From the IMG/VR virus record IMGVR_UViG_3300011113_000805, positions 193,179-257,178 of that record: 64,000 nt of DNA. One strand, written 5' to 3'. A program made the translations under genes and the position numbers. Positions 4,916 to 33,600 of the stretch are shown here, piece after piece (the stretch's first letter is position 1; every line of letters begins with the position of its first letter). Below the pieces are notes generated by a model. That model saw only the letters and a list, made by a program, of their open reading frames with translations, did no database searches and was not told the DNA's origin.

Positions 4916-5019
4916 TTCCTGTTGTTCCTGATTAAATCATGTGATATCAGGAACAACAGGAAATAGGTATATCCATTGCTTTGCCACAATTCCCTGATAA
5001 CAACGTTGTTATCAGGGAA
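4916..5019. repeat. 17-bp inverted repeat followed by a 30-bp perfect palindrome
   Basis: 4916-4932 pairs with 4946-4962; ttccctgataacaac|gttgttatcagggaa at 4990-5019. Confidence 0.85.
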
Positions 5020-11359: not shown

Positions 11360-11653
11360 CTAATTTTTTGATGTGTCTCGTTCAATGAAAGTAACGTCTT
11401 CCTCAACGATGCATATCCACTGAGGAGTTCCGTTGATGAGAAGATGAGCGTAACGCCGCGACATCGTACGGATGTGGGCCATTCTGGTCCAGGCATTCCA
11501 GAAGATATCTCGGCCTCGGCCAGTATATGCGGCATCCAACAGAAGACAGATACGATCTGTCTCATTGTCCCAGCCTCGATCACGCCAATAAAGCATGCCC
11601 CTGAGCAGGATGAGCTCACCAATATGGTCGTTGAGGCGACTAATGAAAGTCAT
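11360..11653 (-). CDS. SH3-like paralog family H protein
   Basis: H.G.LI.L...LYW...RGWD.ETDRIC.LLD...LLI.G.P.W. Confidence 0.7.
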   Translation of the reverse strand: MTFISRLNDHIGELILLRGMLYWRDRGWDNETDRICLLLDAAYTGRGRDIFWNAWTRMAHIRTMSRRYAHLLINGTPQWICIVEEDVTFIERDTSKN

Positions 11654-11934
11654 TCAGCGTCTCCATCGATGAGTTCTATGTTATCAAGCTTCAAGCATAC
11701 CCACCGAGGGATTCCATCAATGAGAAGATGAGCGTAATAATTGTTGTCTCCACCCGGGGTACTCGCGTCAAAGTCGAAATCGTAACTCGTTTGATCCATA
11801 TGAAGAACATCCAGCAGCACACAGATACGATCTGTCTCATCGTCCCAGCCTCGACCTCCCCACCAGTAAAGCTCGGTATTGAGACGGATGAGGCCGCCGG
11901 CGTGGGCCTTGAACCGGTCAAACCTGTGGGTCAT
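11650..11934 (-). CDS. Paralog family H protein
   Basis: Same motifs; ATGA overlap. Confidence 0.7.
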   Translation of the reverse strand: MTHRFDRFKAHAGGLIRLNTELYWWGGRGWDDETDRICVLLDVLHMDQTSYDFDFDASTPGGDNNYYAHLLIDGIPRWVCLKLDNIELIDGDAE

Positions 11935-12218
11935 TCAGCACCTTCATGGAGGAGCTCGATGTCATCCATGTCATGAATCTGGATCCACCGCGGTGCGTCA
12001 TAGATGAAGATCTTTGCGTACGTAAAGGTACGACTGTTCCCGGCTGCGGTCACAGCCTCGACCAGGCCGGGCATGTTGGAGGTCTCCAACAGGAGACAGA
12101 TCGTATCTGTCTCATTGTCCCAGCCTCGACCTCCCCACCAGAAGATCTTGACGTTGAGGCGAATAAGACCACCGGCGTGCGCCTTCAGATCTGAAAGGCA
12201 GACCGTATTCCGTGCCAT
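11931..12218 (-). CDS. Paralog family H protein
   Basis: Same motifs; degenerate type B element upstream. Confidence 0.7.
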   Translation of the reverse strand: MARNTVCLSDLKAHAGGLIRLNVKIFWWGGRGWDNETDTICLLLETSNMPGLVEAVTAAGNSRTFTYAKIFIYDAPRWIQIHDMDDIELLHEGAE

Positions 12219-12269
12219 GAAATCTCCGTGATGTGATCTGTTATGGCGCGGCGACGTTAACGTACATGT

Positions 12270-12560
12270 TCAAGCCTTCTCCTTCCCCTCCACAGTCTTG
12301 CCAGTGACGGGATTGACATAGGACACGTTGAAGTACACCGTGTCCTCATGGGACCATTCGGCGCCAATGATCGTGGCCCGAATGTTGTGACGGCTCCGGA
12401 TTCCATTGATAGGGTCGATGAGGTTTCTTTCAATCATCATCGTCTTGCCCAGCAATGGGGCAATCTGCTTCCGAAGGATCTTGTTCCGGGCGTTCTCGAG
12501 GTCGACCAGCACCGCGTTGCTGAATTCGTCGATATCAGTATCAGTGATCAAACTGGACAT
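12270..12560 (-). CDS. Hypothetical protein
   Basis: Start MSSLITD after the type B GGAG. Confidence 0.65.
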   Translation of the reverse strand: MSSLITDTDIDEFSNAVLVDLENARNKILRKQIAPLLGKTMMIERNLIDPINGIRSRHNIRATIIGAEWSHEDTVYFNVSYVNPVTGKTVEGKEKA

Positions 12561-12654
12561 GTTTCTCTCCGTGATGTGATCTGTTATTATAGTGCCGGCA
12601 CTTTGTACAGGCACTTTGTGCAAAAAGTGCAAAATTTAGGTCACATCACGTGTC

Positions 12655-12739
12655 ACCAGAATGATCCAGGATGTATCATGCCGGCAACCAATGGTAACAT
12701 ATGGATATCTAGCTATGATACATCCTGGATCATTCTGGT
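12655..12739. repeat. 25-bp perfect inverted repeat (hairpin copy 1)
   Basis: accagaatgatccaggatgtatcat / atgatacatcctggatcattctggt. Confidence 0.85.
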
Positions 12740-12788
12740 ACAACAGTGTGATATTCGTGTATGCCATGAGACATGCGCCTTGAACCGG

Positions 12789-13112
12789 TCAAGACCGAAG
12801 GTCATCAGCACCTTCATGGAGGAGTTCAACATCGCAAAAACGGATCTGGACCCACTTAGGTGCACCATCGATGAGAAGGTGCAAGCAATGGCGTGCGTAG
12901 AAGTCACCATGCTGCGCCGCCCACAGGCAATATCGACCCTCGGCATCGACCAAGACGTCTTGGTCGATGCCGGCGGTGTTCAACAGAACACAGATACGAC
13001 CGTGTTTTCGATCAAAGAAGGAGCCTCCTCGCCAGAAGAGATCGGTGCTGAGCCGGACGAGACCGCCGATATGGGACTTGAGCTGCTCACGATTAGGCGC
13101 ATGATCAGTCAT
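12789..13112 (-). CDS. Paralog family H protein
   Basis: SHIGGLVRL...RICVLL...LLIDGAPKW. Confidence 0.7.
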   Translation of the reverse strand: MTDHAPNREQLKSHIGGLVRLSTDLFWRGGSFFDRKHGRICVLLNTAGIDQDVLVDAEGRYCLWAAQHGDFYARHCLHLLIDGAPKWVQIRFCDVELLHEGADDLRS

Positions 13113-13245
13113 TCAAGGTCTCCTTGAATGAGTTCAGCATCATCTTCATGAAGACGCACCCTTCGAGGCTGCATGACGATCGACCACCAGGAAAGGCGCC
13201 TTGTTGCTCGATATCGAGTCGCTCCAAATACGGAGCTGGCCAGGT

Positions 13246-13524
13246 TCAATCCTCATTGAGGTTATACGATCTGCCAGCATCCGGATCGACCCATGGCACG
13301 TCACAACGCGCCTTGGAGGCGTCGCCGTCCATCTCGGGCGTCCAGTCCTGATGGAGCTGGTGCTGATGCTTCAGAGAGTAGATGATGCTATCCACAACAG
13401 CATCAAACTCCGGCGTGTTGAGCGGAACAGGGATCAGCCGCCGGTTGATGAGATCCCAAGCAATGCGGAGTGCAAGGGTTTCGAAGTGATCCACATGGAC
13501 CACCAGGGTATCGATGTTCTGCAT
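13246..13524 (-). CDS. Hypothetical protein
   Basis: Packed ORF with GGAGG RBS. Confidence 0.55.
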   Translation of the reverse strand: MQNIDTLVVHVDHFETLALRIAWDLINRRLIPVPLNTPEFDAVVDSIIYSLKHQHQLHQDWTPEMDGDASKARCDVPWVDPDAGRSYNLNED

Positions 13525-13725
13525 TTACCACCTCCGCCGAGCTGCACCGCCGGCACGTGCGATGTCGTCGAGAGTACAGGCGATCCCGCCCTCCGCGGAG
13601 GTGGTCCATTCCCGGATCTCTTTATTGAGATCACCCTCGTCGAGGATGATGTTGAGCCGCTCCTTGAGGTCAGTGAGGGCGGCATGGATAGCGGTGAGTT
13701 CGGCTTCGAGCTGGGAGTTCGTCAT
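13525..13725 (-). CDS. Hypothetical protein
   Basis: Start MTNSQLE after a type B element. Confidence 0.6.
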   Translation of the reverse strand: MTNSQLEAELTAIHAALTDLKERLNIILDEGDLNKEIREWTTSAEGGIACTLDDIARAGGAARRRW

Positions 13726-13819
13726 ATTCCTCTCCGTGATGTTATCTGTTATTATGGTGACGTCACTTTGTACAGGCACTTTGTGCAAAAAGCACAAATT
13801 TTTGATCACATCACAGTTA

Positions 13820-13904
13820 ACCAGAATGACCCAGGATAGGTTGCAAATTGCGGCCATGGTAACCTATGGATAGGTGCCTGCAATACATCCTGGGTCATTC
13901 AGGT
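13820..13904. repeat. Hairpin copy 2 (covarying homolog of 12655..12739)
   Basis: gaatgacccaggat / atcctgggtcattc; conserved loop ATGGTAAC.TATGGATA. Confidence 0.8.
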
Positions 13905-14189
13905 GCAACAGCGTTGACTTACATGGCCGACTCAAAGCTTCGGATTATCTATCCCTTCTGGCCCCGGAACAGCACCTCCATGAGGGATCAGGTGATGTTC
14001 GAGTTCTCAGCAGCTCGAGCGGCAGAAAGAAAGCTGAGCAGCCCCAGCGGAATCCAGGCAACATGCCAAGGTGCCGGGGCACCAATGGCGAAAAGGATCG
14101 CTCCGGAGGCGAAGAAGGCGCACATCACAGCATTGATATTCATGAGATTCCACAGAGTGATGAATGTTGTTATCGAGATATGCACGTCA

Positions 14190-14547: not shown

Positions 14548-15894
14548 TCAATTGCCAGGAAGGGGCTTCTTCATGTAGATGGCGGTCTCACGAGCATCCG
14601 GCTCACCCCAGGCAAGCTTCTGCCCAGGAACCAGAACCCAGGCCCGCCGGATCCGGGAGGCCGCCGGCTTCGAAGCGCCACCGTCGGTGAGGATGATGTA
14701 CCCCTCACACTTCGTCTTGTGGGCGTGCTTCGTCGGTGCATCGAAGTCGGTGCCTCCACAGCGGGTACGGAGGGTCTTCGGCACCGTGCCACGCTTCCAG
14801 GCCAGGGCGTTCTTCTCGTCCACCTCGGTGTCGAAGTAGTAGAGCATGAAGTTCACCCGATGGGAGAGGTGGGCAAGCTCACCGAAGAGGAGGGCGATGT
14901 CATCGTCGGACATGGAACCCGACTGGTCCAGGTAGACGTTGATGGTCGGGACATAGTCCCGGGTGGTGCCCGGGTGAATGCCCGGGTACTTCTTGTTGAG
15001 GCGGAAGACCGACGTCATCCGGTCGGCCCGCTGGGTGCAACCGACGAACTGCCGGAGGACTGCACGCCAGTCGATCTCCCCGATGACCTTCTTCCGGATC
15101 TCCTCCCGCATGGAGACAGGCACCGACCCCCAGGAGTTCTTGGCATCGGCACGCTCGGTCGCCGACTTCACGATCTGGCGCATCTTCCCGGCGACGAACT
15201 CACGATCCTCGTCACTGAGCTCATCCCATCCCTCATGAGAGTCCATCTCGCCGAGGCCGCCTTCACTCTCGCCGGCGCCAGAAGCCTGAGTGTACTCCTT
15301 GAAGTCGGGGTCCTGCATGAGACGAGCGAAGTACTCCTCGCTGGAGAGGTCACGAGGGAGACTCTGCACCAGAGTGCTTACCCGCTTGAGGAGGTCCTGT
15401 CGCTCCTGGGGGAGGGAGGCCATGTCCTTGGGCATCTTCAGCGCACGACCCGGAAGAAGACCACAGGCCGGCATCTCGTCTGCCGAGAGGGTGCAGTTGA
15501 TGGCGAGATCGGTGGCCCAGTTCCAGGCCAGGTGGGGCTGGTACCGGCGGGTCGTGGTGTGCTCGAGCGCGAGGTGCAACGCCTCGTGCTTCAGGATGCC
15601 TCGAACACCAGCCTCCGAGTAGGCCGCCAGGAAGAGCGGGTTCCACCAGAACCGCATGATGCCCTCCTTGAAGAGGACGCCGGCAGTGGGGATGCCTTCG
15701 GTCGCCTCCTTGTGGAGGCTCCGGACGATGTCGGCGTAGAAGGGCTCACGGAAGAGCAAGGCAACGAGATGGGCATCGATGTCGAACCCCGCCGCATCGG
15801 CCTTGAGGCGCTCGATGCTGCGCTCGGGGAAGTCAGGATGCTCAAAGTTGCCCTTGCGGACGAGGGTTTCAGCGGTGCCGGTGTCGTTGGCCAT
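14548..15894 (-). CDS. DUF2201-type putative metallopeptidase + VWA domain protein
   Basis: HEALH (HExxH), WNWATDLAIN, DQSGS (MIDAS), GGTDF, IILTDG. Confidence 0.85.
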   Translation of the reverse strand: MANDTGTAETLVRKGNFEHPDFPERSIERLKADAAGFDIDAHLVALLFREPFYADIVRSLHKEATEGIPTAGVLFKEGIMRFWWNPLFLAAYSEAGVRGILKHEALHLALEHTTTRRYQPHLAWNWATDLAINCTLSADEMPACGLLPGRALKMPKDMASLPQERQDLLKRVSTLVQSLPRDLSSEEYFARLMQDPDFKEYTQASGAGESEGGLGEMDSHEGWDELSDEDREFVAGKMRQIVKSATERADAKNSWGSVPVSMREEIRKKVIGEIDWRAVLRQFVGCTQRADRMTSVFRLNKKYPGIHPGTTRDYVPTINVYLDQSGSMSDDDIALLFGELAHLSHRVNFMLYYFDTEVDEKNALAWKRGTVPKTLRTRCGGTDFDAPTKHAHKTKCEGYIILTDGGASKPAASRIRRAWVLVPGQKLAWGEPDARETAIYMKKPLPGN

Positions 15895-16310: not shown

Positions 16311-16421
16311 GTGATGTCTCCTGTGAAGTTGGTTAGATGCGAAAGTCGACCAGGCTTGGTCCTTCATGGAGGCGTCATTAGTATCGGCACTTTGTACAGG
16401 CGCCGAGAGAAAATAGCTGAA

Positions 16422-16913
16422 CTATTTTCCGGACTGGAGGTGTTCAACCAGCCACTTAGCTTGGACTTCGTACGAAGTAGCCTCGGCAGCCCGAGCAGCC
16501 CGAGCAGCAGCTCCAGCAGCACGAGCAGCCTCAGCAGCAGCCCAAGTAGCCCCAGCATCAGCAGCAGCAGCAGCCCAAGCAGCACGAGCAGCCCAAGCAG
16601 CAGCCCGAGCAACACGAGCAGCCCAAGCAGCAGCTTCCAGCTCCTCAGAAGTGATGCTCTTCTCATCCTCCAGCCACCGGTCCACCAAGGACAGGGCATG
16701 TGTCACACTCTGATCCGGCTCACGTCCTGATCGAGCCAGTGCCTCACCGGCACACCATCGGGAAAATGACACCAGGTCCCGATGGGTGATGATACCAATG
16801 TGCTCCCGGCCTTGCAGGAGGATGCAGTTGAGCTGGAGGTTTCGTGTCAGCTCTGCCTCAGACAGAGTCGTCTGCTCACCGGTGACGGGATCAACCAGGA
16901 CGTACTGGGTCAT
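16422..16913 (-). CDS. Ala-rich Imm5-like paralog
   Basis: GIITHRDLV.F.RWCA / VDRWLED / AAW-AAR tract / QA.WLVEHLQSGK. Confidence 0.8.
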   Translation of the reverse strand: MTQYVLVDPVTGEQTTLSEAELTRNLQLNCILLQGREHIGIITHRDLVSFSRWCAGEALARSGREPDQSVTHALSLVDRWLEDEKSITSEELEAAAWAARVARAAAWAARAAWAAAAADAGATWAAAEAARAAGAAARAARAAEATSYEVQAKWLVEHLQSGK

Positions 16914-16920
16914 GAGATAT

Positions 16921-16994
16921 CTCCGTGATGAGATCTGTTATTACGGTGCCGGCACTTTGTACAGGCACCGAGAGAAAATAGCTGAACTATTTTC
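16921..16994 (-). promoter_or_regulatory. Type B element with UP-region inverted repeat GAAAATAG-N5-CTATTTTC containing the upstream stop codon
   Basis: Representative full-length copy; palindromic spacer gtgccggcac. Confidence 0.75.
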
Positions 16995-17466
16995 CGGACT
17001 GGAGGTGCTCCACAAGCCACTTGGCTTGGGTTTCATATGAAGCAGCCTCAACAGCCCAAGCAGCCCGAGCAGCAGACCGAGCAGCCCAAGCAGCATCAGC
17101 AGCCCAAGTAGCATCAGCTGCAGCCCAAGCAGCCCAAGCAACATCAGCAGCATCAGCAGCAGCAGCCTCAGCAGCCCCAGCAGCAGCTTCCAGCTCCTCA
17201 GGAGTAACACTCTGCTGGTCCTCCAGCCATCGATCGACCATGGTCAGAGCATGGATCGACCTCTGATCAGGCTCATCCACCAGCAGCGTCAGCATCTCAC
17301 CGGCACACCACCGAGCAAATGCGACCAAGTCTCGGTGGGTGATGATGCCAATGTGCTCCCGGCCTTGCAGGAGCACGCAATTCTGTCTGAGGTTTCGTAT
17401 CAGTTCGACCTCAGGCAGAATCGACTGCTCACCGGTGACGGGATCGATCAAAGTGTACTGGTGCAT
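16987..17466 (-). CDS. Ala-rich Imm5-like paralog
   Basis: Family motifs; start MHQYTL. Confidence 0.8.
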   Translation of the reverse strand: MHQYTLIDPVTGEQSILPEVELIRNLRQNCVLLQGREHIGIITHRDLVAFARWCAGEMLTLLVDEPDQRSIHALTMVDRWLEDQQSVTPEELEAAAGAAEAAAADAADVAWAAWAAADATWAADAAWAARSAARAAWAVEAASYETQAKWLVEHLQSGK

Positions 17467-17538
17467 GTCGAGCTCCGTGATGAGATCTGTTATTATGGCT
17501 AAGCCACTTTGTACAGGTCCTGGGAGCAAATAGTTGAA

Positions 17539-18018
17539 CTATTTTCCGGACTGGAGGTGTTCAACCAGCCACTGAGTTTGAACTTCATATGAAGTAGCCC
17601 TGGCAGCAGTCTGAGCAGTCCGAGCAGCCCAAACAGCAGCCTCAGCAGCCCGATCAGCAGCCATGGTAGTAGTCCAAGAAGCAGCCTCAGCAGCCCGATC
17701 AGCAGCCATGGTAGCAGTCCGAGCATCATAAGCAGCAGCTACCAGCTCCTCAGAAGTGACGCTCTTCTCGTTCTCCAGCCACCGGTCCACCAAGGACAGG
17801 GCATGTGTCACCTTCAGGTCAGGCTCATCCACCAGCAGCGTCAACGTCTCACCGGCACACCATCGAGCAAAGGCGACCAGGTCCCGGTGGGTGATGATGC
17901 CCAGATGCTCATTCCCTCGAAGAAGGATGCAGCTGAGCTGGAGGTTTCGGGTGAGCTCAAGCTCCGACAGAGTCGTCTGCTCACCGGTGACGGGATCGAT
18001 CAAAGTGTACTGGTGCAT
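17539..18018 (-). CDS. Ala-rich Imm5-like paralog
   Basis: Family motifs; start MHQYTL. Confidence 0.8.
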   Translation of the reverse strand: MHQYTLIDPVTGEQTTLSELELTRNLQLSCILLRGNEHLGIITHRDLVAFARWCAGETLTLLVDEPDLKVTHALSLVDRWLENEKSVTSEELVAAAYDARTATMAADRAAEAASWTTTMAADRAAEAAVWAARTAQTAARATSYEVQTQWLVEHLQSGK

Positions 18019-18090
18019 GTCAAGCTCCGTGATGAGATCTGTTATTATGGCTGAGCCACTTTGTACAGGTCCTGGGAGCAAATAGTTGAA

Positions 18091-18567
18091 CTATTTTCCG
18101 GACTGGAGGTGCTCCACAAGCCACTGAGCTTGAGACTCGTACAAAAGCCCACGACTCCCAGCATCCCAAGCAGCCCCGGCAGCAGCCCAAGCAGCAGCCC
18201 CAGCAGTCCGAGCAGCCTCAGCAGCCTCAGCAGCAGCCCGAGCAGCCCGAGCAGCCTGAGCAGCCCGAGCAGCAGCCCCAGCAGCAGCTTCCAGCTCCTC
18301 AGGTGTAACACTCTGCTGATCCTCAAGCCACTGGTCCACCAAGGACAGGGCATGTGTCACCTTCAGGTCAGGCTCATCCACCAGCAGCGTCAGCGTCTCA
18401 CCGGCACACCATCGAGCAAAGGCGACCAGGTCCCGGTGGGTGATGATGCCCAGATGCTCATTCCCTCGAAGAAGGATGCAGCTGAGCTGGAGGTTTCGGG
18501 TGAGGTCGATCTCAGACAGAAAAGTTTGCTTACCGGTGACAGAATCAACCAAGGTGTACCGGGACAT
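18091..18567 (-). CDS. Ala-rich Imm5-like paralog
   Basis: Family motifs. Confidence 0.8.
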   Translation of the reverse strand: MSRYTLVDSVTGKQTFLSEIDLTRNLQLSCILLRGNEHLGIITHRDLVAFARWCAGETLTLLVDEPDLKVTHALSLVDQWLEDQQSVTPEELEAAAGAAARAAQAARAARAAAEAAEAARTAGAAAWAAAGAAWDAGSRGLLYESQAQWLVEHLQSGK

Positions 18568-18638
18568 GAGAACTCCGTGATGAGATCTGTTATTTCGGCT
18601 GAGTCGCTTTGTACAGGCGCCGACGGAAAATAGCTGAA

Positions 18639-19172
18639 CTATTTTCCGGACTGGAGGTGCTGCTCAAACCACTGAGCTTGGACTTCGTATGAAGTAGCTC
18701 CGGCAGCAGCTCCAGCAGCCCGAGCAGCCCAAACAGCAGCCTCAGCAGCCCGATCAGCAGCCATGGTAGCAGCCCAAGAAGCAGTCTGAGCAGCAGCATG
18801 AGCAGCCCAAGCAGCAGTCTGAGCAGCAATATGAGCAGCCCAAGAAGCCCGAGCAGCAGCCCAAGCAGCCTGAGCAGCTGCTTCAGCAGCGTCTTTCAGC
18901 TCCTCATTGCTGAGGCTCCTCTCATCCTCCAGCCACCGGTCCACCAAGGACAGGGCATGTGTCACCTTCAGGTCAGGCTCATCCACCAGCAGCTTCAGCA
19001 TCTCACCGGCACACCATCGAATGAAGATGACCAGGTCCCGGTGGGTGATGATGCCCAGATGCTCATTCCCTCGAAGAAGGAGGTAGCCAATCTGGAGGTT
19101 TCGGGTGAGCTTAAGCTCCGACAGAGTCCACTGCCGGCCGGTGGCAGGATCAATCAAAGTGTATTTAGGCAT
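18639..19172 (-). CDS. Ala-rich Imm5-like paralog
   Basis: Family motifs. Confidence 0.8.
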   Translation of the reverse strand: MPKYTLIDPATGRQWTLSELKLTRNLQIGYLLLRGNEHLGIITHRDLVIFIRWCAGEMLKLLVDEPDLKVTHALSLVDRWLEDERSLSNEELKDAAEAAAQAAWAAARASWAAHIAAQTAAWAAHAAAQTASWAATMAADRAAEAAVWAARAAGAAAGATSYEVQAQWFEQHLQSGK

Positions 19173-19260
19173 TTCCGAAGCTCCGTGATGAGATCTGTTA
19201 TTATGGCTGAGCCACTTTGTACAGGTCCCGGGAGCACTTTTCTAAAAATGTTTACTCCTT

Positions 19261-19628: not shown

Positions 19629-19713
19629 TGGTAGCCCCAGCCGGACTCGAACCGGCACGCTCAATGAACAAGAGATTTTGAGTCTCTCGCGTCTTCCGTT
19701 CCGCCATGGGGCC
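19629..19713 (-). tRNA. trnL: tRNA-Leu(CAA)
   Basis: Cloverleaf, long variable arm, CT-CAA-AA loop, GTTCGA, CCA. Confidence 0.92.
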
Positions 19714-19720
19714 AATGAAG

Positions 19721-19795
19721 TGGTGGGTCATCCGAGACTCGAACTCGGAACTAACGGATTAAGAGTCCGCTACTCTACCATTGAGTTAATGACCC
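19721..19795 (-). tRNA. trnK: tRNA-Lys(CTT)
   Basis: CT-CTT-AA loop, T arm, CCA. Confidence 0.95.
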
Positions 19796-19800
19796 GAAGA

Positions 19801-19876
19801 TGGTGGGTTGTCTGGGGCTTGAACCCAGGGCCTACGGATTAAAAGTCCGCTGCTCTACCGACTGAGCTAACAACCC
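19801..19876 (-). tRNA. trnK: tRNA-Lys(TTT)
   Basis: CT-TTT-AA loop, CCA. Confidence 0.95.
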
Positions 19877-19880
19877 ATAA

Positions 19881-19968
19881 TGGAGGAAGCGGTGGGATTC
19901 GAACCCACGATCCCTTTCAGGATGCCGGTTTTCAAGACCGGAGCCTTAAACCGCTCGGCCACGCTTCC
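19881..19968 (-). tRNA. trnS: tRNA-Ser(TGA)
   Basis: CT-TGA-AA loop, long variable arm, CCA. Confidence 0.95.
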
Positions 19969-19972
19969 AAGA

Positions 19973-20047
19973 TGGTACTCCCAACGGGAATCGAACCCGT
20001 GTTACCGGAGTGAAAATCCGGTGTCCTGACCGTTAGACGATGGGAGC
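19973..20047 (-). tRNA. trnE: tRNA-Glu(TTC)
   Basis: TT-TTC-AC loop, CCA. Confidence 0.95.
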
Positions 20048-20050
20048 GAA

Positions 20051-20124
20051 TGGTTGGGGTGGTAGGATTCGAACCCACATAGCCTGATCCAAAGTCAGGC
20101 GTCCTGCCGTTGGACGACACCCCA
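20051..20124 (-). tRNA. trnQ: tRNA-Gln(TTG)
   Basis: CT-TTG-GA loop, U1-A72, CCA. Confidence 0.95.
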
Positions 20125-20141
20125 GTAATGAAAGAATGAAG

Positions 20142-20218
20142 TGGTGCTGAAGGTGGGAATCGAACCCACGGCCTGCGGTTTACAAGACCGCTGCTCTGGC
20201 CAACTGAGCTACTTCAGC
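20142..20218 (-). tRNA. trnT: tRNA-Thr(TGT)
   Basis: CT-TGT-AA loop, CCA. Confidence 0.95.
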
Positions 20219-20460
20219 ATTTTCTCGGCCGTCGCCAGCGACTCATTCACATGAACCCAGCTGCCCTCCCGCAGGAGGATGACACAACCTCCGATAGGCC
20301 AATCCAACAGGGTCGGCGGCAACATGTTCCAGCTGCTCACCCCTGGAGGAAGAGGGTAAGGAATGCAGGTGAGGATCTCATCCCGAGTAAAGACCCGTTC
20401 GGGATAAGTCCACCCGCCGCCGGGGCCAGGGGTAACAATGCTGAAGGTGAGCTCTTCCAC
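20209..20460 (-). CDS. Hypothetical protein inside the tRNA cluster
   Basis: GTG start after GAGG; type A promoter at about 20482-20510; stop lies within tRNA-Thr. Confidence 0.5.
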   Translation of the reverse strand: MEELTFSIVTPGPGGGWTYPERVFTRDEILTCIPYPLPPGVSSWNMLPPTLLDWPIGGCVILLREGSWVHVNESLATAEKMLK

Positions 20461-20542
20461 GTCGACGTCCTCAGGATTAGAATATAATCACTTTGGTGAT
20501 TTTGAACAGGCGGTGCCTGCACTTTCTTCAACTTTTCTTGAG

Positions 20543-20618
20543 TGGCTCCGGCAACAGGACTCGAACCTGTGACCCGCGGATTAACAGTCCGCTGCTCTAC
20601 CGACTGAGCTATGCCGGA
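20543..20618 (-). tRNA. trnN: tRNA-Asn(GTT)
   Basis: CT-GTT-AA loop, CCA. Confidence 0.95.
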
Positions 20619-20623
20619 ATAAG

Positions 20624-20700
20624 TGGTCTCCTCGACAGGACTTGAACCTGTGACCCCCGCGTTAGGAATGCGGTGCTCTATCCAACTGAGCTACGAGGAG
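20624..20700 (-). tRNA. trnR: tRNA-Arg(CCT)
   Basis: TT-CCT-AA loop, A31-C39 mismatch, CCA. Confidence 0.9.
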
Positions 20701-22441: not shown

Positions 22442-22538
22442 ATTCCTCTCCGCGATGATATCTGTTATTATGGTCGGAGGGTTTTGTACAGGTCCGGGGA
22501 CACCTTTTTTGAAGGAATTTTCCCCGGACCTGCACCGG

Positions 22539-23288: not shown

Positions 23289-23434
23289 GTGTATGATGTC
23301 CTTTTCCTGAGGGTTTGTGGGGTTCCGGAACCATTCCGCCCCAACAAGATGAATATAATCACTTTCGGGTCAGTGGGACAGGTCTCCGGAGCACCTTTTT
23401 GCACATTTTTGTGCAGTGCTCCGGAGATAGCGTG

Positions 23435-24045: not shown

Positions 24046-24140
24046 TGCTGACTCCGTATGTGAGAGGAAACCATCAACCAACATGATCTGTTATTATGGT
24101 GTCGGCACTTTGTACAGGCACCGTGAGCAAATAGTTGAAA

Positions 24141-24659
24141 CTATTTTCCGGACTGGAGATGCTCGACCCACCACTGGGCCTGGGCTTCATATGAAGTGTA
24201 ATCCCGAGAAACCTGAGAAGTAGCCATGGCTGCATTTGAAGCCCCGTCACCATACACAGCTGCACGCTGCGCGGCAGCCTGGGCAGTCCAAGTGGCAGTT
24301 CGGGCAGCAACAAAAGCAACCAGTGGCGCAGCATCAGTAATAGCAGGAGCAGCAGCCCAAGCAGCAGCACGAGCAGCCGCTTCCAGCTCCTCAGAAGTGA
24401 CGCTCTTCTCATCTTCAAGCCACCGGTCCACCAAGGACAATGCATGGGCCACCCTCTGATTAGGCTCGCCTTTCAATCGAGCCAGCGTCTCATTGGTGCA
24501 CCATCGAGCGAAGAGAACTAAGTCTCGGTGAGTGACGATACCGAGGTGCTCCTGGTCTCGGAAGAGAATACAGTTGAGCCTGATATTTTGGGTAAGCTCA
24601 AGCTCCGACAGCGTGTGCTGCTCGCCGGTGACAGGATCGATCAGGGTGTACCGGGCCAT
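24141..24659 (-). CDS. Ala-rich Imm5-like paralog
   Basis: Family motifs; start MARYTL. Confidence 0.8.
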   Translation of the reverse strand: MARYTLIDPVTGEQHTLSELELTQNIRLNCILFRDQEHLGIVTHRDLVLFARWCTNETLARLKGEPNQRVAHALSLVDRWLEDEKSVTSEELEAAARAAAWAAAPAITDAAPLVAFVAARTATWTAQAAAQRAAVYGDGASNAAMATSQVSRDYTSYEAQAQWWVEHLQSGK

Positions 24660-24733
24660 GAGAACTCCGTGATGAGATCTGTTATTATGGTGCCCGCACT
24701 TTGTACAGGCTCCGGAGCACCTTTTTGCAAAAA

Positions 24734-25198
24734 TTATTGAGCCGACCTCAGGTGCTCCACCAGCCATTGGGCTTGGGCTTCGAAGGAAACACCGGCAGAG
24801 TTATTAGCAGCCCATGCAGCAGACCCAGCAACATCAGCAGCGCCGGCAGCACTAGAAGCAGCCCAAGCAGCCCGCGCAGCAACAGCACCAGGGCAAGCAA
24901 CATCAGCAGCGGCAGCAGCCTGTTTCAGCTCCTCACTGGAGGCAGAACCCGGGTCGATCAGCCACTTGTCGACCAGGCCCAGCGCAGTATAGACTTCAGG
25001 GGGAACCGTGTGACACTGAGCAAGAGTCTTCTCAACACACCACCGACAGAAGGAGACAACATCGCGATGTGTGATGACGCCGATGTGTTCATCCCCACGA
25101 AGGAGGATATGATTGACCCGCATATGATGTGTCAGTTCCGACGCAGCTACCGTCGACGTGCCACCGGTGAATGGATTCAGGAGGGTATACCGGGTCAT
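24734..25198 (-). CDS. Ala-rich Imm5-like paralog
   Basis: Family motifs; start MTRYTL; TAA stop. Confidence 0.8.
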   Translation of the reverse strand: MTRYTLLNPFTGGTSTVAASELTHHMRVNHILLRGDEHIGVITHRDVVSFCRWCVEKTLAQCHTVPPEVYTALGLVDKWLIDPGSASSEELKQAAAAADVACPGAVAARAAWAASSAAGAADVAGSAAWAANNSAGVSFEAQAQWLVEHLRSAQ

Positions 25199-25316
25199 GA
25201 GGGCTCCGTGATGAGATCTGTTATTACGGTGCCGGCACTTTGCACAGGTCCCTGTGCAACTTTTTTGTGAAAATAGTTGCAGGCCTCCCGTGCGCGCGTA
25301 ATAGGAGATTGCCGTC

Positions 25317-29529: not shown

Positions 29530-30015
29530 TTATTGACCGGACTGGAGGTGTTCAACCAGCCACTGAGCTTGGGCTTCATATGAAACAGCCCAAGTAGCAC
29601 GAGCAGCCCAAGTAGCATGAACAGTAGCCCGAGCAACATCAGAAGCAGCCCAAGCAGCCCGAGCAGCAGCCCAAGCAGTAGCCCGAGCAGCAGCCCGAGC
29701 AGTAGCCCCAGCATCCCAAGCATCAAAAGCAGCAGCTACCAGCTCCTCAGAAGTGATGCTCTTCTCATTCTCCAGCCACCGGTCCACCAAGGACAGGGCA
29801 TGTGTCACAGTGTGATCCGGTTCACATTTCAGTCGAGCCAAAATCTTACCAGCGCACCACCGAGTGAAGATGACTAGGTCCCGGTGGGTGATGATTCCCA
29901 AATGCTCCCGGCCTTGAAGAAGAACGCAATTGAGCTGAAGGTTTTGGGTGAGCTCTGCCTCAAACAGAGTCGTCTGCCGGCCGGTGACCGGATCAATCAA
30001 TGTGTATTGGGCCAC
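29530..30015 (-). CDS. Ala-rich Imm5-like paralog
   Basis: Family motifs; GTG start. Confidence 0.8.
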   Translation of the reverse strand: MAQYTLIDPVTGRQTTLFEAELTQNLQLNCVLLQGREHLGIITHRDLVIFTRWCAGKILARLKCEPDHTVTHALSLVDRWLENEKSITSEELVAAAFDAWDAGATARAAARATAWAAARAAWAASDVARATVHATWAARATWAVSYEAQAQWLVEHLQSGQ

Positions 30016-30088
30016 GTCAAATCTCCGTGATGAGATCTGTTATTTCAGCACCGGCACTTTGTACAAGCGCCGAGAGAAAATAGCTGAA

Positions 30089-30574
30089 CTATTTTCCGGA
30101 CTGAAGGTGTTCAACCAGCCACTGAGCCTGAGACTTGTAAGAAAGCCCACGATCCTCAGCAGACCGAGCAACATCAGCAGCAACCCAAATAGCCCGAGCA
30201 GCCCGAGCAGCAGCCCAAGCAGCATCAGCAGCAGCCCAAATAGCCCGAGCAGCGTCAGCAGCATCAACAGCAGCCCAAGCAACCTCAGCGACGGCTTCCA
30301 GCTCCTCAGGAGTAACTCTCTTTTCATCCTCCAGCCACCGATCGACCAGGGTCAAGGCATACTGTGCCTCAGGAGTCGATGTGCCCTTCGCTCGAGCAAT
30401 TGCCTCCATGGCACACCACCGAGCAAAGGCGACCAAGTCTCGGTGGGTGATGATACCAATGTGCTCCCGGCCTTGCAGGAGGATGTAGTTAGGAGCGAGG
30501 TTTTGTGTCAGCTCGACCTCAGACAGAGTCGTCTGCTGGCCGGTAATAGGATCGATCAGTGTGTACAGGTGCAT
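30089..30574 (-). CDS. Ala-rich Imm5-like paralog
   Basis: Family motifs; start MHLYTL. Confidence 0.8.
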   Translation of the reverse strand: MHLYTLIDPITGQQTTLSEVELTQNLAPNYILLQGREHIGIITHRDLVAFARWCAMEAIARAKGTSTPEAQYALTLVDRWLEDEKRVTPEELEAVAEVAWAAVDAADAARAIWAAADAAWAAARAARAIWVAADVARSAEDRGLSYKSQAQWLVEHLQSGK

Positions 30575-30647
30575 GTCGAGCTCCGTAATGAGATCTGTTA
30601 TTACAGTGCCGGCACTTTGTACAGGCACCGCGAGCAAATAGTCGAAA

Positions 30648-31151
30648 CTATTTTTCGGACCGCAGATGCTCCACCAGCCACTGAGCTTGGACTTCGTACG
30701 AAGCAGTCTGAGTAGCCCGAGTAACCCAAGCAGTCCGAGCAGCAGCCCGAGTAGCCCAAGCAACAGCCTCAGCAGCAGCCCAAGCAGCCCCAGCAACAGC
30801 CTCAGTAGTAGCTCCAGCAGCCCAAGCAACAGCCTCAGCAGCCTGAGCAGCCCCAGCAGCCCGAGCAGCAGCTTCCAGCTCCTCAGGAGTAACACTCTGC
30901 TGGTCCTCCAGCCACCGGTCCACCAAGGACAGGGCATGTGTCACCTTCAGGTCAGGCTCATCCACCAGTCGAGCCAGCATCTTACCAGCGCACCACCGAG
31001 CAAAGGCGACCAAGTCTCGGCGGGTGATGATGCCAATGTGCTTCCTATCTTGAAGAAGAATGCAATTGAGCTGAAGGTTTCGTGTCAGCTCTGCCTCAGA
31101 CAGAGTCGTCTGCTGGCCGGTGGCAGGATCGATCAGTGTGTATTGGGCCAT
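30648..31151 (-). CDS. Ala-rich Imm5-like paralog
   Basis: Family motifs. Confidence 0.8.
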   Translation of the reverse strand: MAQYTLIDPATGQQTTLSEAELTRNLQLNCILLQDRKHIGIITRRDLVAFARWCAGKMLARLVDEPDLKVTHALSLVDRWLEDQQSVTPEELEAAARAAGAAQAAEAVAWAAGATTEAVAGAAWAAAEAVAWATRAAARTAWVTRATQTASYEVQAQWLVEHLRSEK

Positions 31152-31225
31152 GTCAAATCTCCGTGATGAGACCTGTTATTTCAGTACCGGCACTTTGTAC
31201 AGGTCCTGGGAGCAAATAGTCGAAA

Positions 31226-31768
31226 CTATTTTCCGGACTGGAGGTGTTCAACCAGCCAACATGCTTGGGCTTCATATGAAGCAATCTCAGTAGCCTCAGC
31301 AGCCCAAGCAGCCCGAGCAGCAGCCCAAGCAGCCTGAGCAGCAAACCGAGCAGCCTCAGCAGCAGCCCAAGCAGCCTCAACAGCCCAAGCAGCCCGAGCA
31401 GCAGCCCAAGCAGCCCCAGCAACAGCCTGAGCGGCAGTCCAAGCAGCAGCCTCAGCAGTCCGAGCAGCCCAAGCAGCATCAGCAGCAGCTTTCAGCTCCT
31501 CAGGAGTAACACTCTGCTGATCCTCCAGCCACTGGTCGACCATGGTCAGAGTATGTGTCACCTTCAGGTCAGGCTCATCCACCAGTCGAGCCAGCATCTT
31601 ACCAGCGCACCACCGAGCAAAGGCGACCAAGTCTCGATGGGTGATGATGCCAATGTGCTCCCCATCTCGAAGGAGGATGCAGCCAATCTGGAGGTTTCGG
31701 GTGAGCTCTACCTCAGACAGAGTCGTCTGCCGGCCGGTGGCAGGATCGATCAGTGTGTATTGGGCCAT
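31226..31768 (-). CDS. Ala-rich Imm5-like paralog
   Basis: Family motifs. Confidence 0.8.
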   Translation of the reverse strand: MAQYTLIDPATGRQTTLSEVELTRNLQIGCILLRDGEHIGIITHRDLVAFARWCAGKMLARLVDEPDLKVTHTLTMVDQWLEDQQSVTPEELKAAADAAWAARTAEAAAWTAAQAVAGAAWAAARAAWAVEAAWAAAEAARFAAQAAWAAARAAWAAEATEIASYEAQACWLVEHLQSGK

Positions 31769-31841
31769 GTCAAATCTCCGTGATGAGACCTGTTATTTCA
31801 GTACCGGCACTTTGTACAGGTCCCGGGAGCAAATAGCTGAA

Positions 31842-32327
31842 CTATTTTCCGGACTGGAGGTGCTCAACAAACGTTTGTGCTTGAGCTTCATAAGTGATGA
31901 TAGCATGATAATCAAGTGACCAGGCTATTTCAGCAATAATCTCCAAGGCCCAATTAGCATTGGCAATAACCCGCACCGGAGAAGCAATAATCCAATCCGG
32001 TGACCATATAGAAGTCTCACCATTGGTGATCACATATCCTGCAATGAAGTCAAGTTGTTCACAGGACAGGCTATTTGGATCCTCTAACCATTGATCGGCT
32101 AGCTGTATAGCATACAAAGAATCTGGTTCCGGTAGTTCGATCATCCGATTCTTTATCACATCTGCACACCGTCGAGCGAAGACGACCAAGTCTCTATATG
32201 TAACGACACCAATATGGTTATTCCCTTGAAGAAGAATGCAATTAAGCATAAGATTTTGCAATAGCTCGGTTTTAGGTACAGTTTTGCTAAAGCCTGTGAA
32301 AGGATTGATTAGAGTGTAATGGATCAT
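31842..32327 (-). CDS. Divergent Imm5-like paralog (non-repetitive middle)
   Basis: Family N- and C-termini; Ala tract replaced by AT-rich sequence. Confidence 0.75.
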   Translation of the reverse strand: MIHYTLINPFTGFSKTVPKTELLQNLMLNCILLQGNNHIGVVTYRDLVVFARRCADVIKNRMIELPEPDSLYAIQLADQWLEDPNSLSCEQLDFIAGYVITNGETSIWSPDWIIASPVRVIANANWALEIIAEIAWSLDYHAIITYEAQAQTFVEHLQSGK

Positions 32328-32399
32328 AGGAATTCCATGATGAGATCTGTTATTACAGTGCCGGCACTTTGTACAGGCACCGCGAGCAAATAGTCGAAA

Positions 32400-32525
32400 C
32401 TATTTTTCGGACCGCAGATGCTCCACCAGCCACTGAGCTTGAGACTTGTTGTGCTCCTCATCTCGAAGGAGGATGCAATCCTGCCTGAGGTTTCGTGTCA
32501 GCTCGACCTTGGACAGGTCGCCCAC
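32400..32525 (-). pseudogene. In-frame deletion remnant of an Imm5-like paralog
   Basis: LSKVELTRNLRQDCILLRDEEH fused to KSQAQWLVEHLRSEK*. Confidence 0.7.
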
Positions 32526-32533
32526 CGGCCGGG

Positions 32534-32959
32534 TCAGGCCACCCTCTTCGATCCGCCCTTCTTGGGGGCAACCGGGCCGCGGAAGACCAGGGTGTTGACC
32601 ACTCCCAAGTACCCGATCGGCTCCCCCTCAGCAGCCTTCTGCATCGCCTCGGAGGCTACCTCGTCGAGGCCTTCGGACCCTGGCACGGAGAATGCCACGT
32701 CCACGTCAGAGTCGTCACGGAACCTGTTCCTCTCAAGAACGGAGCCGATGATCCACACGGACACCTCCTCCGCTGGGAGGTCGAGGACCTCCGCGGCCAG
32801 TTCCTTGAGGGAGGGTGCGGCGCCGGCCACGGCGCGGATGGCATCCTTTCTGTACGCGTCGAGGTCGGGGTCTTGGGAGGCAAGGACCTCGTTGAGGGAA
32901 TGTGTCACTTCTTCACGGATGATAGACTTGAGCTTGGATAACTTTATCTTCATGGGCAA
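32534..32959 (-). CDS. Leader-bearing minimal nucleotidyltransferase (Pol-beta/MNT fold)
   Basis: IIGSVL...DSDVDV; leader LSKLKSIIREEV...LNE. Confidence 0.75.
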   Translation of the reverse strand: MPMKIKLSKLKSIIREEVTHSLNEVLASQDPDLDAYRKDAIRAVAGAAPSLKELAAEVLDLPAEEVSVWIIGSVLERNRFRDDSDVDVAFSVPGSEGLDEVASEAMQKAAEGEPIGYLGVVNTLVFRGPVAPKKGGSKRVA

Positions 32960-33042
32960 TAAGTATGTCTGCCGCCGAGAAACCCATTAAAGAATAAAAG
33001 CGGGTCAAGTCGTGCGGGCTGTTTGGAGCAACTTTTGTATCT

Positions 33043-33525: not shown

Positions 33526-33600
33526 GTCCAGGACTCCGTGATGAGATCTGTTATTTCGGCTGAGTCGCTTTGTACAGGCACCGCGAGCAAATAGTCGAAA

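What the first reader, a model, noticed from the sequence alone, without database searches (positions are those of the whole stretch)
12655..13904. Two copies of a long hairpin with compensatory changes and a conserved loop
Copy 1 has a 25-bp perfect stem. Copy 2 keeps pairing through double changes (gatcc/ggatc to gaccc/gggtc; atcat/atgat to ttgca/tgcaa) and conserves CCA(A)TGGTAAC.TATGGATA in the loop. Each lies about 45 nt upstream of a type B promoter. Selection appears to act on structure, so it may be a small RNA, a processing site, or a folded-ssDNA recombination site (inference).
Basis: partly seen in the sequence, partly recalled or inferred. Interest (0 to 1): 0.65.

Follow-up and report, generated by a model that had tools for sequence, protein, structure and literature searches.

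The report
Portable hairpin of phage promoter cassettes
The two long hairpins are real, conserved copies of a palindromic element that sits in front of a repeated promoter in the fast-changing small-gene region of a giant T4-like phage; it is an unusually large version of the known stem-loop-plus-promoter cassettes (PeSLs), and its exact role is still untested.

Summary
Hairpin 1 (12655-12739) has a perfect 25-bp stem and is the longest perfect hairpin in the 257-kb genome. Hairpin 2 (13820-13904) pairs at 22 of 26 positions. The genes run on the minus strand. Each hairpin follows a transcription unit and lies 43 nt upstream of a promoter-like block that occurs 19 times in a GC-rich island of small ORFan genes.

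The genome is a T4-type jumbo phage: it has a Gp23 capsid protein and a T4 portal. Hairpin 1 orthologs occur in four other lineages from lake metagenomes. A diverged form ('group B') and a third, flipped copy elsewhere in this genome also exist. Close orthologs keep 24-25 of 25 pairs, including one T-A/C-G double change. Distant copies keep the loop core but only part of the stem.

The hairpin-plus-promoter unit stands in front of at least five different genes. Hairpin 2 with its promoter and gene is a 443-nt indel relative to a close relative.

Best reading: a PeSL-like composite stem-loop/promoter cassette, with the hairpin insulating transcription units at the RNA level. Function is inferred, not shown. 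A DNA-level protein-binding site and palindrome upkeep by template switching remain serious rivals.

The parts
12655..12739 (-). Hairpin 1: 25-bp perfect stem (12655-12679 / 12715-12739) with a 35-nt loop
   Evidence: Orthologs in L012-L021, L024, L027-L030, L032/L033. Covariance model score 166 bits.
12688..12705 (-). Loop core of hairpin 1 (sense strand TCCATATGTTACCATTGG). It is a quasi-palindrome that can form a small apical hairpin.
   Evidence: 1 of 20 core columns varies among the 5 orthologs. Present in hp2 and group B. Unique to the hairpins in the genome.
12740..12771 (-). Conserved 5' flank of the module. It includes the outer stem strands (ATATCAC.., TGTT) that pair with 12643-12654.
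   Evidence: Homology with L024 and L027 starts 29-32 nt upstream of the hairpin although the upstream genes differ. Outer helix counted.
12612..12654 (-). 43-nt spacer with phased T tracts (TTTTGCAC twice) and the motif GTGATGTGA
   Evidence: Spacer length is 43-45 nt in all family members next to a promoter.
12561..12611 (-). Promoter-like block with 5' UTR and Shine-Dalgarno (CCTGTACAAAG..TATAAT..AACAGATCACATCACGGAG), in front of the 96-aa gene 12273-12560
   Evidence: 19 copies at window 12226-33536 and none elsewhere in the genome
13820..13904 (-). Hairpin 2: diverged paralogous copy, 22 of 26 positions paired, 33-nt loop, loop core at 13854-13870
   Evidence: Covariance model score 115 bits.
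13726..13819 (-). Spacer (13777-13819) and promoter-like block (13726-13776) in front of the 66-aa gene 13528-13725
   Evidence: (repeat D2, 86%)
13526..13968 (-). 443-nt cassette (5' flank, hairpin 2, promoter, 66-aa gene). It is absent from the close relative L012 and is bounded by GGAGGTG(C/G)T repeats.
   Evidence: In L032/L033 the same gene has the other promoter subtype.
12223..12244 (-). 22-nt copy of the promoter 5' UTR, identical to 12566-12587. The two copies bound the 96-aa gene cassette that L027 lacks.
   Evidence: (repeat D3)

Best explanation
The hairpins are the stem-loop half of a portable regulatory module of about 205-215 nt. The module reads: 30-nt flank, 85-nt hairpin, AT-rich spacer with phased T tracts, phage promoter, 5' UTR with Shine-Dalgarno. 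It lies in the hyperplastic small-gene region of a T4-type jumbo phage. It is a large variant of the PeSL (promoter-early stem-loop) cassettes described for T4-like phages.

Shown:
- The module is conserved as a unit.
- It sits between the end of one transcription unit and the next promoter.
- It stands in front of different genes in different lineages.
- It marks cassette indels between close relatives.

Inferred:
- Transcripts reading through from the upstream unit fold the 25-bp (up to about 37-bp) stem.
- That stem attenuates or stops read-through, or is cut by host RNase III. The remaining stem protects the upstream mRNA's 3' end.
- The downstream gene is then expressed mainly from its own promoter.
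- The invariant apical motif is probably recognised by a protein, which is unidentified.
- As a repeated sequence, the module also provides homology for cassette shuffling.
For: - Phage type: T4 Gp23 capsid (1.6e-63) and T4 portal (1e-78). No phage RNA polymerase was found in the held 257 kb, which CheckV rates about 76% complete.
- Setting: 19 promoter-like blocks, confined to a 52-60% GC island of ORFan genes.
- Position: each hairpin lies 37-83 nt after an upstream stop codon and 43-45 nt before the promoter block, in all promoter-linked copies.
- Different downstream genes: a 96-aa gene (window, L012), a 95-aa gene (L027), an array paralog (L024, L023/L026), a 66-aa gene (hp2) and a 442-aa gene (L022/L025).
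- Indels: hp2 with its promoter and gene is a 443-nt indel relative to L012. The 96-aa gene is an indel relative to L027, bounded by identical 22-nt UTR repeats.
- Conservation: arms and loop core vary far less than the flanks. One T-A/C-G double change separates the window from L012.
- Other promoters of the island also have stem-loops, overlapping or just upstream of the promoter (22489-22532, 23383-23427, and the small AAATAG..CTATTT palindromes). This matches the PeSL subclasses (PMC2839356).
- PeSL stem-loops were shown to terminate transcription in a reporter assay (PMC2839356).
- Established knowledge: a perfect stem of 20 bp or more is an RNase III substrate, and a 35-nt spacer disfavours cruciform extrusion in duplex DNA.
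Against: - No U tract within 0-2 nt of the stem. The first T run starts 8-17 nt later, so this is not a canonical intrinsic terminator, and the terminator scan does not call either hairpin.
- Only 2 of 19 promoters carry this hairpin.
- An invariant loop core, and arms built of two CAGRATG repeats 10-11 nt apart, are not needed for termination.
- The third copy, hp3, lies just after a canonical terminator, has no island-type promoter, and carries the loop core on the opposite strand.
- Group B does not keep a stable long stem.
- The promoter block lacks a TTGACA-like -35 element, so 'early sigma-70 promoter' is not shown.
- No transcript data could be obtained.
Confidence: 0.45

Rival explanations
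1. A duplex-DNA protein-binding array. A phage or host protein would bind the quasi-palindromic centre and the four CAGRATG repeats (two direct on the left, two inverted on the right). It would regulate the adjacent promoter or organise recombination or replication. The hairpin potential would then be a by-product of site symmetry.
For: - Each arm is two direct repeats 10-11 nt apart, about one helical turn. This is kept in 7 of 8 arms, including hp3, where the positions between the repeats have changed.
- The loop core is the most conserved part. It matches beyond the positions forced by my search pattern (6 extra nt in group B), and it lies within 1 nt of the centre of the arms.
- hp3 carries the core on the other strand, which is equivalent for duplex DNA but not for RNA.
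- The distance to the promoter is fixed at 43-45 nt, and the one length variant (L026) is a 10-nt duplication.
- Group B keeps the motifs but not a stable stem.
Against: - Double changes that keep complementarity occur at positions outside the CAGRATG cores: position 11 within hp1 orthologs, positions 2, 3 and 13 in hp3, and positions 14, 20 and 25 in group B. These copies coexist in one genome, so a changed protein specificity cannot explain them.
- Perfect symmetry over all 25 positions is more than a binding site needs.
- In group B the inner repeat of the right arm is lost.
- No candidate binding protein was identified. The motif is not enriched elsewhere in the genome.
Confidence: 0.25
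2. A palindrome kept perfect by mutation rather than by selection. Template switching within quasi-palindromes and recombination between the arms would homogenise the arms and can flip the loop. The element would persist as a passenger of the promoter cassette with little or no function of its own.
For: - The palindrome at 12941-12972 lies inside the 107-aa gene and is a perfect 16+16 in the window. L012 differs from it by 5 substitutions within 9 nt on one arm and 1 on the other, all at positions that decide complementarity, and they change the protein (DVLVD against DIIID).
- One-sided intermediates exist in the hairpin family (L024, L032).
- The flipped loop in hp3 is what recombination between inverted arms produces.
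Against: - Arms and loop core are much more conserved than the flanks across lineages whose neighbouring 92-aa gene is only 81-84% identical.
- The loop core cannot be maintained by arm-to-arm templating.
- The element is kept at the same place in five lineages while the genes on both sides change.
Confidence: 0.12
3. A miniature inverted-repeat mobile element (85 bp with 25-bp terminal inverted repeats) or a folded single-strand recombination site of the integron attC type, which would move or capture gene cassettes.
For: - The terminal inverted repeats contain internal direct repeats.
- The element is associated with cassette indels.
- The hp2 cassette is flanked by a GGAGGTG repeat of 8-10 nt.
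- MITEs are known in phage genomes (PMC11602168).
Against: - There is no target-site duplication at the hairpin ends: TA..TG, CA..TG and CA..TT.
- No hairpin-only presence/absence was seen.
- Breakpoints lie at the module edges or inside the promoter, not in the hairpin.
- There are only 3 copies in the genome.
- Bacterial genomes give one unrelated palindrome and IMG/VR gives none.
- Here the centre is conserved and the arms vary, the reverse of attC. No RYYYAAC / GTTRRRY boxes are present.
- The GGAGGTG repeat is the Shine-Dalgarno of the next gene.
Confidence: 0.06
4. An independently transcribed small RNA, or a 43-aa micro-protein gene, overlapping the hairpin.
For: - A 43-codon frame (12767 to 12636, minus strand) is open in the window, L024 and L027, and gene callers call ORFs there.
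- The 30-nt 5' flank is conserved.
Against: - The start codon is lost in L012. A TAG falls in the loop in hp2 and group B.
- Substitutions show no third-position bias.
- There is no conserved -35/-10 pair in front of the hairpin and no terminator after it.
- No Rfam family matches above threshold; only generic miRNA-precursor hairpin matches at 22-29 bits against cut-offs of 54-100.
Confidence: 0.05

Closest known systems
PeSL / PmSL cassettes (promoter-early or promoter-middle stem-loops) of T4-like phages (Arbiol et al. 2010, PMC2839356; Comeau et al. 2014, PMC4122927)
   Same: - T4-type phage.
- A repeated intergenic motif confined to a plastic region of small ORFan genes.
- The same order of parts: stem-loop, AT-rich stretch, promoter, Shine-Dalgarno, start codon.
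- The motif stands in front of unrelated genes.
- Indels and replacements between close relatives are bounded by the motifs.
- Several subclasses differ in where the stem-loop sits relative to the promoter.
   Different: - Published PeSL stems are short (G-run/loop/C-run or A3-4G3/loop/C3T3-4) and sit close to or overlap the promoter. Here the stem is 25 bp (up to about 37 bp with the outer helix), has a 35-nt loop with an invariant 18-nt core, and lies 43 nt upstream of the promoter block.
- Only 2 of 19 promoters carry it, and a third copy stands without the promoter.
- The promoter block has a conserved box near -30 and a YRTAAT -10, not a sigma-70 -35. It therefore looks more like the middle-type PmSL, but no MotA/AsiA was found. 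That search is uninformative, because its controls also gave nothing.
Intrinsic (Rho-independent) terminators
   Same: A stable hairpin at the 3' end of a transcription unit on the sense strand, with T-rich sequence downstream.
   Different: The stem is AT-balanced and far longer than usual, the loop is 35 nt, and the T tract starts 8-17 nt after the stem instead of 0-2 nt. The scan did not call either hairpin.
RNase III processing hairpins of phage polycistronic mRNAs (T7 R1.1-type sites, lambda sib)
   Same: An intercistronic double-stranded RNA stem of 20 bp or more. hp2, with its internal mismatches, resembles the bulged T7 sites.
   Different: No cleavage data exist. The phage record holds no RNase III gene, so the host enzyme would be needed. 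A conserved loop sequence is not a feature of these sites.
Integron attC sites / MITEs
   Same: An imperfect palindrome of about 60-140 bp at cassette boundaries.
   Different: There are no R/L core boxes. The centre is conserved and the arms vary, the reverse of attC. There is no target-site duplication and the copy number is low.

Membership tests
PeSL / PmSL cassette | Lies in a hyperplastic region of a T4-type phage, intergenic, next to small ORFan genes | tested here: met
   Gp23 and T4 portal hits. Neighbouring genes have no Pfam or PHROG match, except the DUF2201 protein. The GC-rich island spans 10-34 kb.
PeSL / PmSL cassette | Motif repeated many times, with sequence conservation over about 100 bp, ending in a Shine-Dalgarno and a start codon | tested here: met
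   19 copies of the promoter / 5' UTR / GGAG / ATG block. The long hairpin itself has only 2 copies in the island plus 1 elsewhere.
PeSL / PmSL cassette | Sigma-70-like early promoter (-35, 17 nt, -10), or a Mot-box middle promoter | tested here: inconclusive
   A -10-like YRTAAT is present. The hexamer 17 nt upstream is GKRCCT, not TTGACA-like. A conserved CCTGTACAAAG box lies near -30. The sigma-70 scan does not call the blocks. No MotA/AsiA hit was found, but the controls also gave nothing. Promoter activity was not tested.
PeSL / PmSL cassette | AT-rich stretch upstream of the promoter | tested here: met
   Phased T tracts (TTTTGCAC twice) at 12612-12640 and 13777-13805
PeSL / PmSL cassette | Stable stem-loop within or just upstream of the promoter that terminates or attenuates upstream transcription | tested here: inconclusive
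   The structure is present and very stable. Termination cannot be tested with these tools. The stem-loop is much larger and lies further upstream than in published PeSLs.
PeSL / PmSL cassette | Indels and gene replacements between close relatives are bounded by the motifs | tested here: met
   The hp2 cassette (13526-13968) is absent from L012. The 96-aa gene is absent from L027 and is bounded by identical 22-nt repeats. The same 66-aa gene stands behind a different promoter subtype in L032/L033.
PeSL / PmSL cassette | Formation of cassette mini-circles | not testable with these tools
   Needs inverse PCR on phage DNA
Intrinsic terminator | G+C-rich stem, short loop, U tract directly after the stem | tested here: not met
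   The loop is 35 nt and there is no T run within 2 nt of the stem. The scan did not report either hairpin.
MITE | Terminal inverted repeats plus target-site duplication, many copies, filled and empty sites | tested here: not met
   Terminal inverted repeats are present. There is no duplication at the ends. The genome has 3 copies. No hairpin-only indel was seen. One unrelated hit in 185,579 bacterial genomes.
Integron attC | R''/L'' and L'/R' boxes (RYYYAAC .. GTTRRRY), a variable centre, and an integrase nearby | tested here: not met
   The boxes are absent from both copies by inspection. The centre is the conserved part. An integrase was not searched for.
Any Rfam family | Score at or above the family's gathering threshold | tested here: not met
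   Only tRNAs pass the threshold in the window. In the hairpin region the best matches are 22-29 bits to miRNA-precursor models with cut-offs of 54-100.

The most novel reading that the evidence does not exclude
The element would be a new class of protein-recognised nested palindrome. Its invariant 18-nt centre, flanked by arms of phased CAGRATG repeats, would be the cis site of a dedicated phage system. That system would direct capture, exchange or inversion of promoter-gene cassettes (an integron-like function in a T4-type phage), or would switch a subset of promoters. It would not be a passive terminator.
Probability: 0.12. Interest if true: 0.75.

Novelty: new variant of a known kind. Interest (0 to 1): 0.4.

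Why it matters
PeSL cassettes are the only proposed mechanism for how T4-type phages shuffle their accessory genes, and they have been described in only a few cultured phage pairs. This window shows the same architecture in uncultured freshwater jumbo phages, with natural examples of cassette gain, loss and promoter swapping.

It also shows a much larger stem-loop whose centre is conserved in sequence. That gives a concrete, testable element for a specific question: are the stem-loops of such cassettes only terminators, or are they also recognition sites?

The nearby coding palindrome is a caution for covariation-based RNA discovery in phage genomes. Template-switch correction can produce 'compensatory' changes without any selection on structure.

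Tried and rejected
- DNA similarity search of the locus against 50,697 phage records: no match.
- IMG/VR pattern scans gave nothing useful. The promoter pattern had 0 hits. The arm pattern had 2 chance hits in coding sequence. The three-part pattern had 0 hits. The loop-only pattern had 3 chance hits.
- The only IMG/VR relative found through the DUF2201 protein (L011, 44% identity) has a different repeated promoter and no such hairpin.
- Exact-protein look-ups for the two genes next to hp2: not on record.
- Homologs of the 442-aa gene behind group B (L037-L039) come from much more distant phages with unrelated upstream sequence.
- The bacterial genome scan gave one Acidobacteriaceae palindrome that shares only a 14-nt arm word and lacks the loop core. 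I treat it as unrelated.
- No Pfam hit in the held 257 kb, which CheckV rates about 76% complete, for RNase III, the RNA polymerase beta subunit, T7-type RNA polymerase, MotA or AsiA. The last three searches had no positive control.
- Coding potential of the 43-codon frame over hairpin 1: rejected. The start codon is lost in L012, there are stops in hp2 and group B, and there is no third-position bias.
- Canonical terminators are not enriched in the window: 14 found against 6.5 expected, 15 against 10.4, and 9 against 14.7. The phage's usual terminator type could therefore not be defined.
- Group B was first aligned by its inner repeat. Its span (83 nt) and the loop offset show it is collinear with hairpin 1 through the outer repeat. 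The A-T to G-C change at position 6 was forced by my search pattern and is not counted as evidence.

Full report
**Observation**

The window is the last 64 kb of a 257,178-bp IMG/VR virus record. Arms 12655-12679 and 12715-12739 are 25 nt long, perfectly complementary, and separated by 35 nt. Arms 13820-13845 and 13879-13904 are 26 nt long, 85% complementary, and separated by 33 nt. Both fold far better than shuffled sequence on either strand: z is about -9.8 for copy 1 and -5 for copy 2. The arm word occurs only in these two elements, 4 matches against 0.14 expected. Hairpin 1 has the longest perfect stem in the whole genome. The second claimed compensation, at the top of copy 2, is only a 5-bp pairing behind three mismatches.

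**Setting**

All genes here are on the minus strand. Read in the gene sense, each hairpin follows the end of a transcription unit. Next comes a 43-nt spacer with two phased TTTTGCAC tracts. Then comes a block of about 50 nt (CCTGTACAAAG .. YRTAAT .. AACAGATCNCATCACGGAG .. ATG). That block occurs 19 times between 12226 and 33536 and nowhere else in the genome.

This stretch is a 52-60% GC island in a 40-48% GC genome. It is full of small genes without family matches. It also holds a nine-tRNA cluster.

The genome encodes a T4 Gp23 capsid protein and a T4 portal. No RNA polymerase was found. It is therefore a T4-type jumbo phage that presumably uses the host polymerase.

**Relatives**

The 107-aa gene upstream of hairpin 1 has an 86%-identical homolog on 20-odd metagenome contigs. 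All ten loci fetched carry hairpin 1 at the same place, 96.7% identical over 120 nt. Two of the four differences are the two sides of stem pair 11: T-A in the window and C-G in the relative. By my arithmetic the chance of that is under 1%.

A three-part pattern scan of metagenome contigs found two further hairpin 1 lineages (L024, L027) and a GC-rich diverged form, group B (L022, L023, L025, L026). Each is followed by the same kind of promoter. The 92-aa gene gave one more lineage, L032/L033. L024 has a C.A mismatch at pair 11, and L032 has a G.U at pair 23.

A covariance model built from six sequences recovers all of these. Group B scores 25-27 bits. In the window's own genome the model also finds a third copy, hp3, at G000:166855-166993, scoring 30 bits.

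**Structure or sequence?**

| Region (5 hairpin 1 lineages) | Variable columns |
|---|---|
| Arms | 4 of 50 |
| Loop core | 1 of 20 |
| Loop edges | 6 of 15 |
| Flanks | 8 of 31 and 13 of 25 |

Over the six-sequence alignment that adds hp2, 91.7% of cells pair and 5 pairs change on both sides. 14 of 500 shuffles reach that, and every slid control is far lower. The close copies therefore clearly keep pairing, but most pairs never vary.

Group B is collinear with hairpin 1 over all 85 nt. By position it has 15 Watson-Crick pairs, 3 G.U pairs and 7 mismatches. Positions 14, 20 and 25 show double changes. Position 6 was forced by my search pattern. Its fold is no better than shuffles (z -0.4).

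hp3 keeps a 12-bp outer stem, with double changes at positions 2, 3 and 13, but has lost the inner stem. In every copy the loop core (TCCATAKGTTACCAT(T)GG) is kept. In hp3 it lies on the opposite strand. Each arm consists of two CAGRATG repeats 10-11 nt apart.

Structure is therefore conserved among near relatives and decays with distance. The centre is conserved throughout.

**A caution on compensatory change**

A palindrome lies inside the 107-aa gene at 12941-12972, a perfect 16+16 in the window. The close relative differs there by five substitutions within nine nt on one arm and one on the other. All of them decide complementarity, and they change the protein. This is the signature of template-switch correction of quasi-palindromes. 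The same process could create the paired change in hairpin 1 without any selection.

**Modularity**

- Homology between lineages begins 29-32 nt upstream of the hairpin, just after the upstream stop codon, even where the upstream genes differ.
- The unit stands in front of a 96-aa gene (window, L012), a 95-aa gene (L027), an array paralog (L024; L023/L026), a 66-aa gene (hp2) and a 442-aa gene (L022/L025).
- Window 13526-13968 (flank, hp2, promoter, 66-aa gene) is missing from L012. The junctions lie at GGAGGTG repeats.
- In L032/L033 the same 66-aa gene sits behind the other promoter subtype.
- L027 lacks the 96-aa gene, which in the window is bounded by identical 22-nt UTR repeats.
- Other promoters of the island have their own stem-loops overlapping or abutting the promoter.

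**Interpretation**

These features match the PeSL cassettes of T4-like phages: stem-loop, AT-rich stretch, promoter and Shine-Dalgarno, repeated in hyperplastic regions, mediating cassette indels, with stem-loops that terminate transcription in reporter assays (PMC2839356, PMC4122927). I file the hairpins as an unusually large variant of that kind.

The most likely action is at the RNA level: attenuation of read-through, or RNase III cleavage followed by 3'-end protection. Several features are not explained by that model:
- the missing U tract;
- the invariant centre;
- the phased repeats in the arms;
- the flipped core in hp3, and its position just after a canonical terminator.

They keep a duplex-DNA binding-site model alive. 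No transcript data could be obtained.

**Rejected readings**

- A micro-protein or a stand-alone small RNA (no conserved frame, no promoter or terminator, no Rfam match).
- A MITE or an attC-like site (no target duplication, no hairpin-only indel, no copies in bacterial genomes or IMG/VR).

Noticed in passing
G000:C1:166855-166993 (= L047:1501-1639), outside the window: A third, diverged copy of the hairpin family (covariance model 30 bits on the + strand, 23 on the - strand). It has a 12-bp outer stem and carries the loop core TATATGTTACC on the strand opposite to hp1 and hp2. It lies between a 166-aa and a 256-aa gene, just after a canonical terminator (AAAGGCC-ATAT-GGCCTTT plus a T run), and has no island-type promoter.
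   Followed up: partly
window 12941-12972: A perfect 32-bp palindrome inside the 107-aa gene. The close relative L012 differs by 5 substitutions within 9 nt on one arm and 1 on the other, which changes DVLVD to DIIID. This looks like template-switch correction of a quasi-palindrome.
   Followed up: partly
window 12226-33536: 19 copies of a promoter-like block of about 50 nt (CCTGTACAAAG..YRTAAT..AACAGATCTCATCACGGAG), confined to a 52-60% GC island in a 40-48% GC genome. It has no sigma-70-type -35; a conserved box lies near -30.
   Followed up: partly
window 16385-19190, 24086-25215, 29531-33545: At least 13 tandem paralogs of about 155-180 aa, each with its own promoter copy. The N-terminal part is conserved (..QYTLIDP..GIITHRDLV..RWC..). 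The middle is variable, rich in Ala/Trp repeats (AAWAA, AARAA). The C-terminus is conserved (SYE.QAQWLVEHLQSGK). Function unknown.
   Followed up: no
window 11360-13112: Four paralogs of 94-107 aa (..KAH.GGL.RLN...WWGGRGWD.ETDRIC.LL..HLLIDG.P.W..). One of them lies directly upstream of hairpin 1. No family match.
   Followed up: no
window 12570-12582 / 12638-12650 and the matching sites beside hp2: A 13-nt inverted repeat (CGTGATGTGAYCT / AGATCACATCACG) brackets the type B promoter. The upstream copy can instead pair with the 5' flank of the hairpin (ATATCAC), so alternative structures are possible in read-through RNA.
   Followed up: no
window 22489-22532 and 23383-23427: Perfect 12-bp hairpins whose 3' arm is the upstream box of a promoter copy and whose loop is the AT-rich stretch. 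They are a different stem-loop/promoter arrangement from hp1 and hp2.
   Followed up: no
window 4916-4962 and 4990-5019: A 17-bp perfect hairpin and a 30-bp perfect palindrome, side by side, in the gap between two large genes. About a dozen other intergenic perfect hairpins of 12-18 bp occur across the genome, and most lack a U tract.
   Followed up: no
window 19632-20700: A cluster of nine tRNA genes on the minus strand inside the island.
   Followed up: no
L026 (group B), spacer between hairpin and promoter: A 10-nt duplication (GTGCATAAAA) relative to L022/L023/L025. It lengthens the hairpin-to-promoter spacer by one helical turn.
   Followed up: no
L049:6543-6623 (Acidobacteriaceae MAG contig): A bacterial palindromic element whose arms share a 14-nt word (AATGACCCAGGATG) with the phage hairpin arms but which lacks the loop core. 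Probably chance.
   Followed up: partly
window 14551-15894 (minus strand): A 448-aa protein with DUF2201 metallopeptidase and VWA-like domains. PHROGs labels this family 'HNH endonuclease'. It is conserved at 96% DNA identity in L012 and is the only neighbouring gene with a family match.
   Followed up: no
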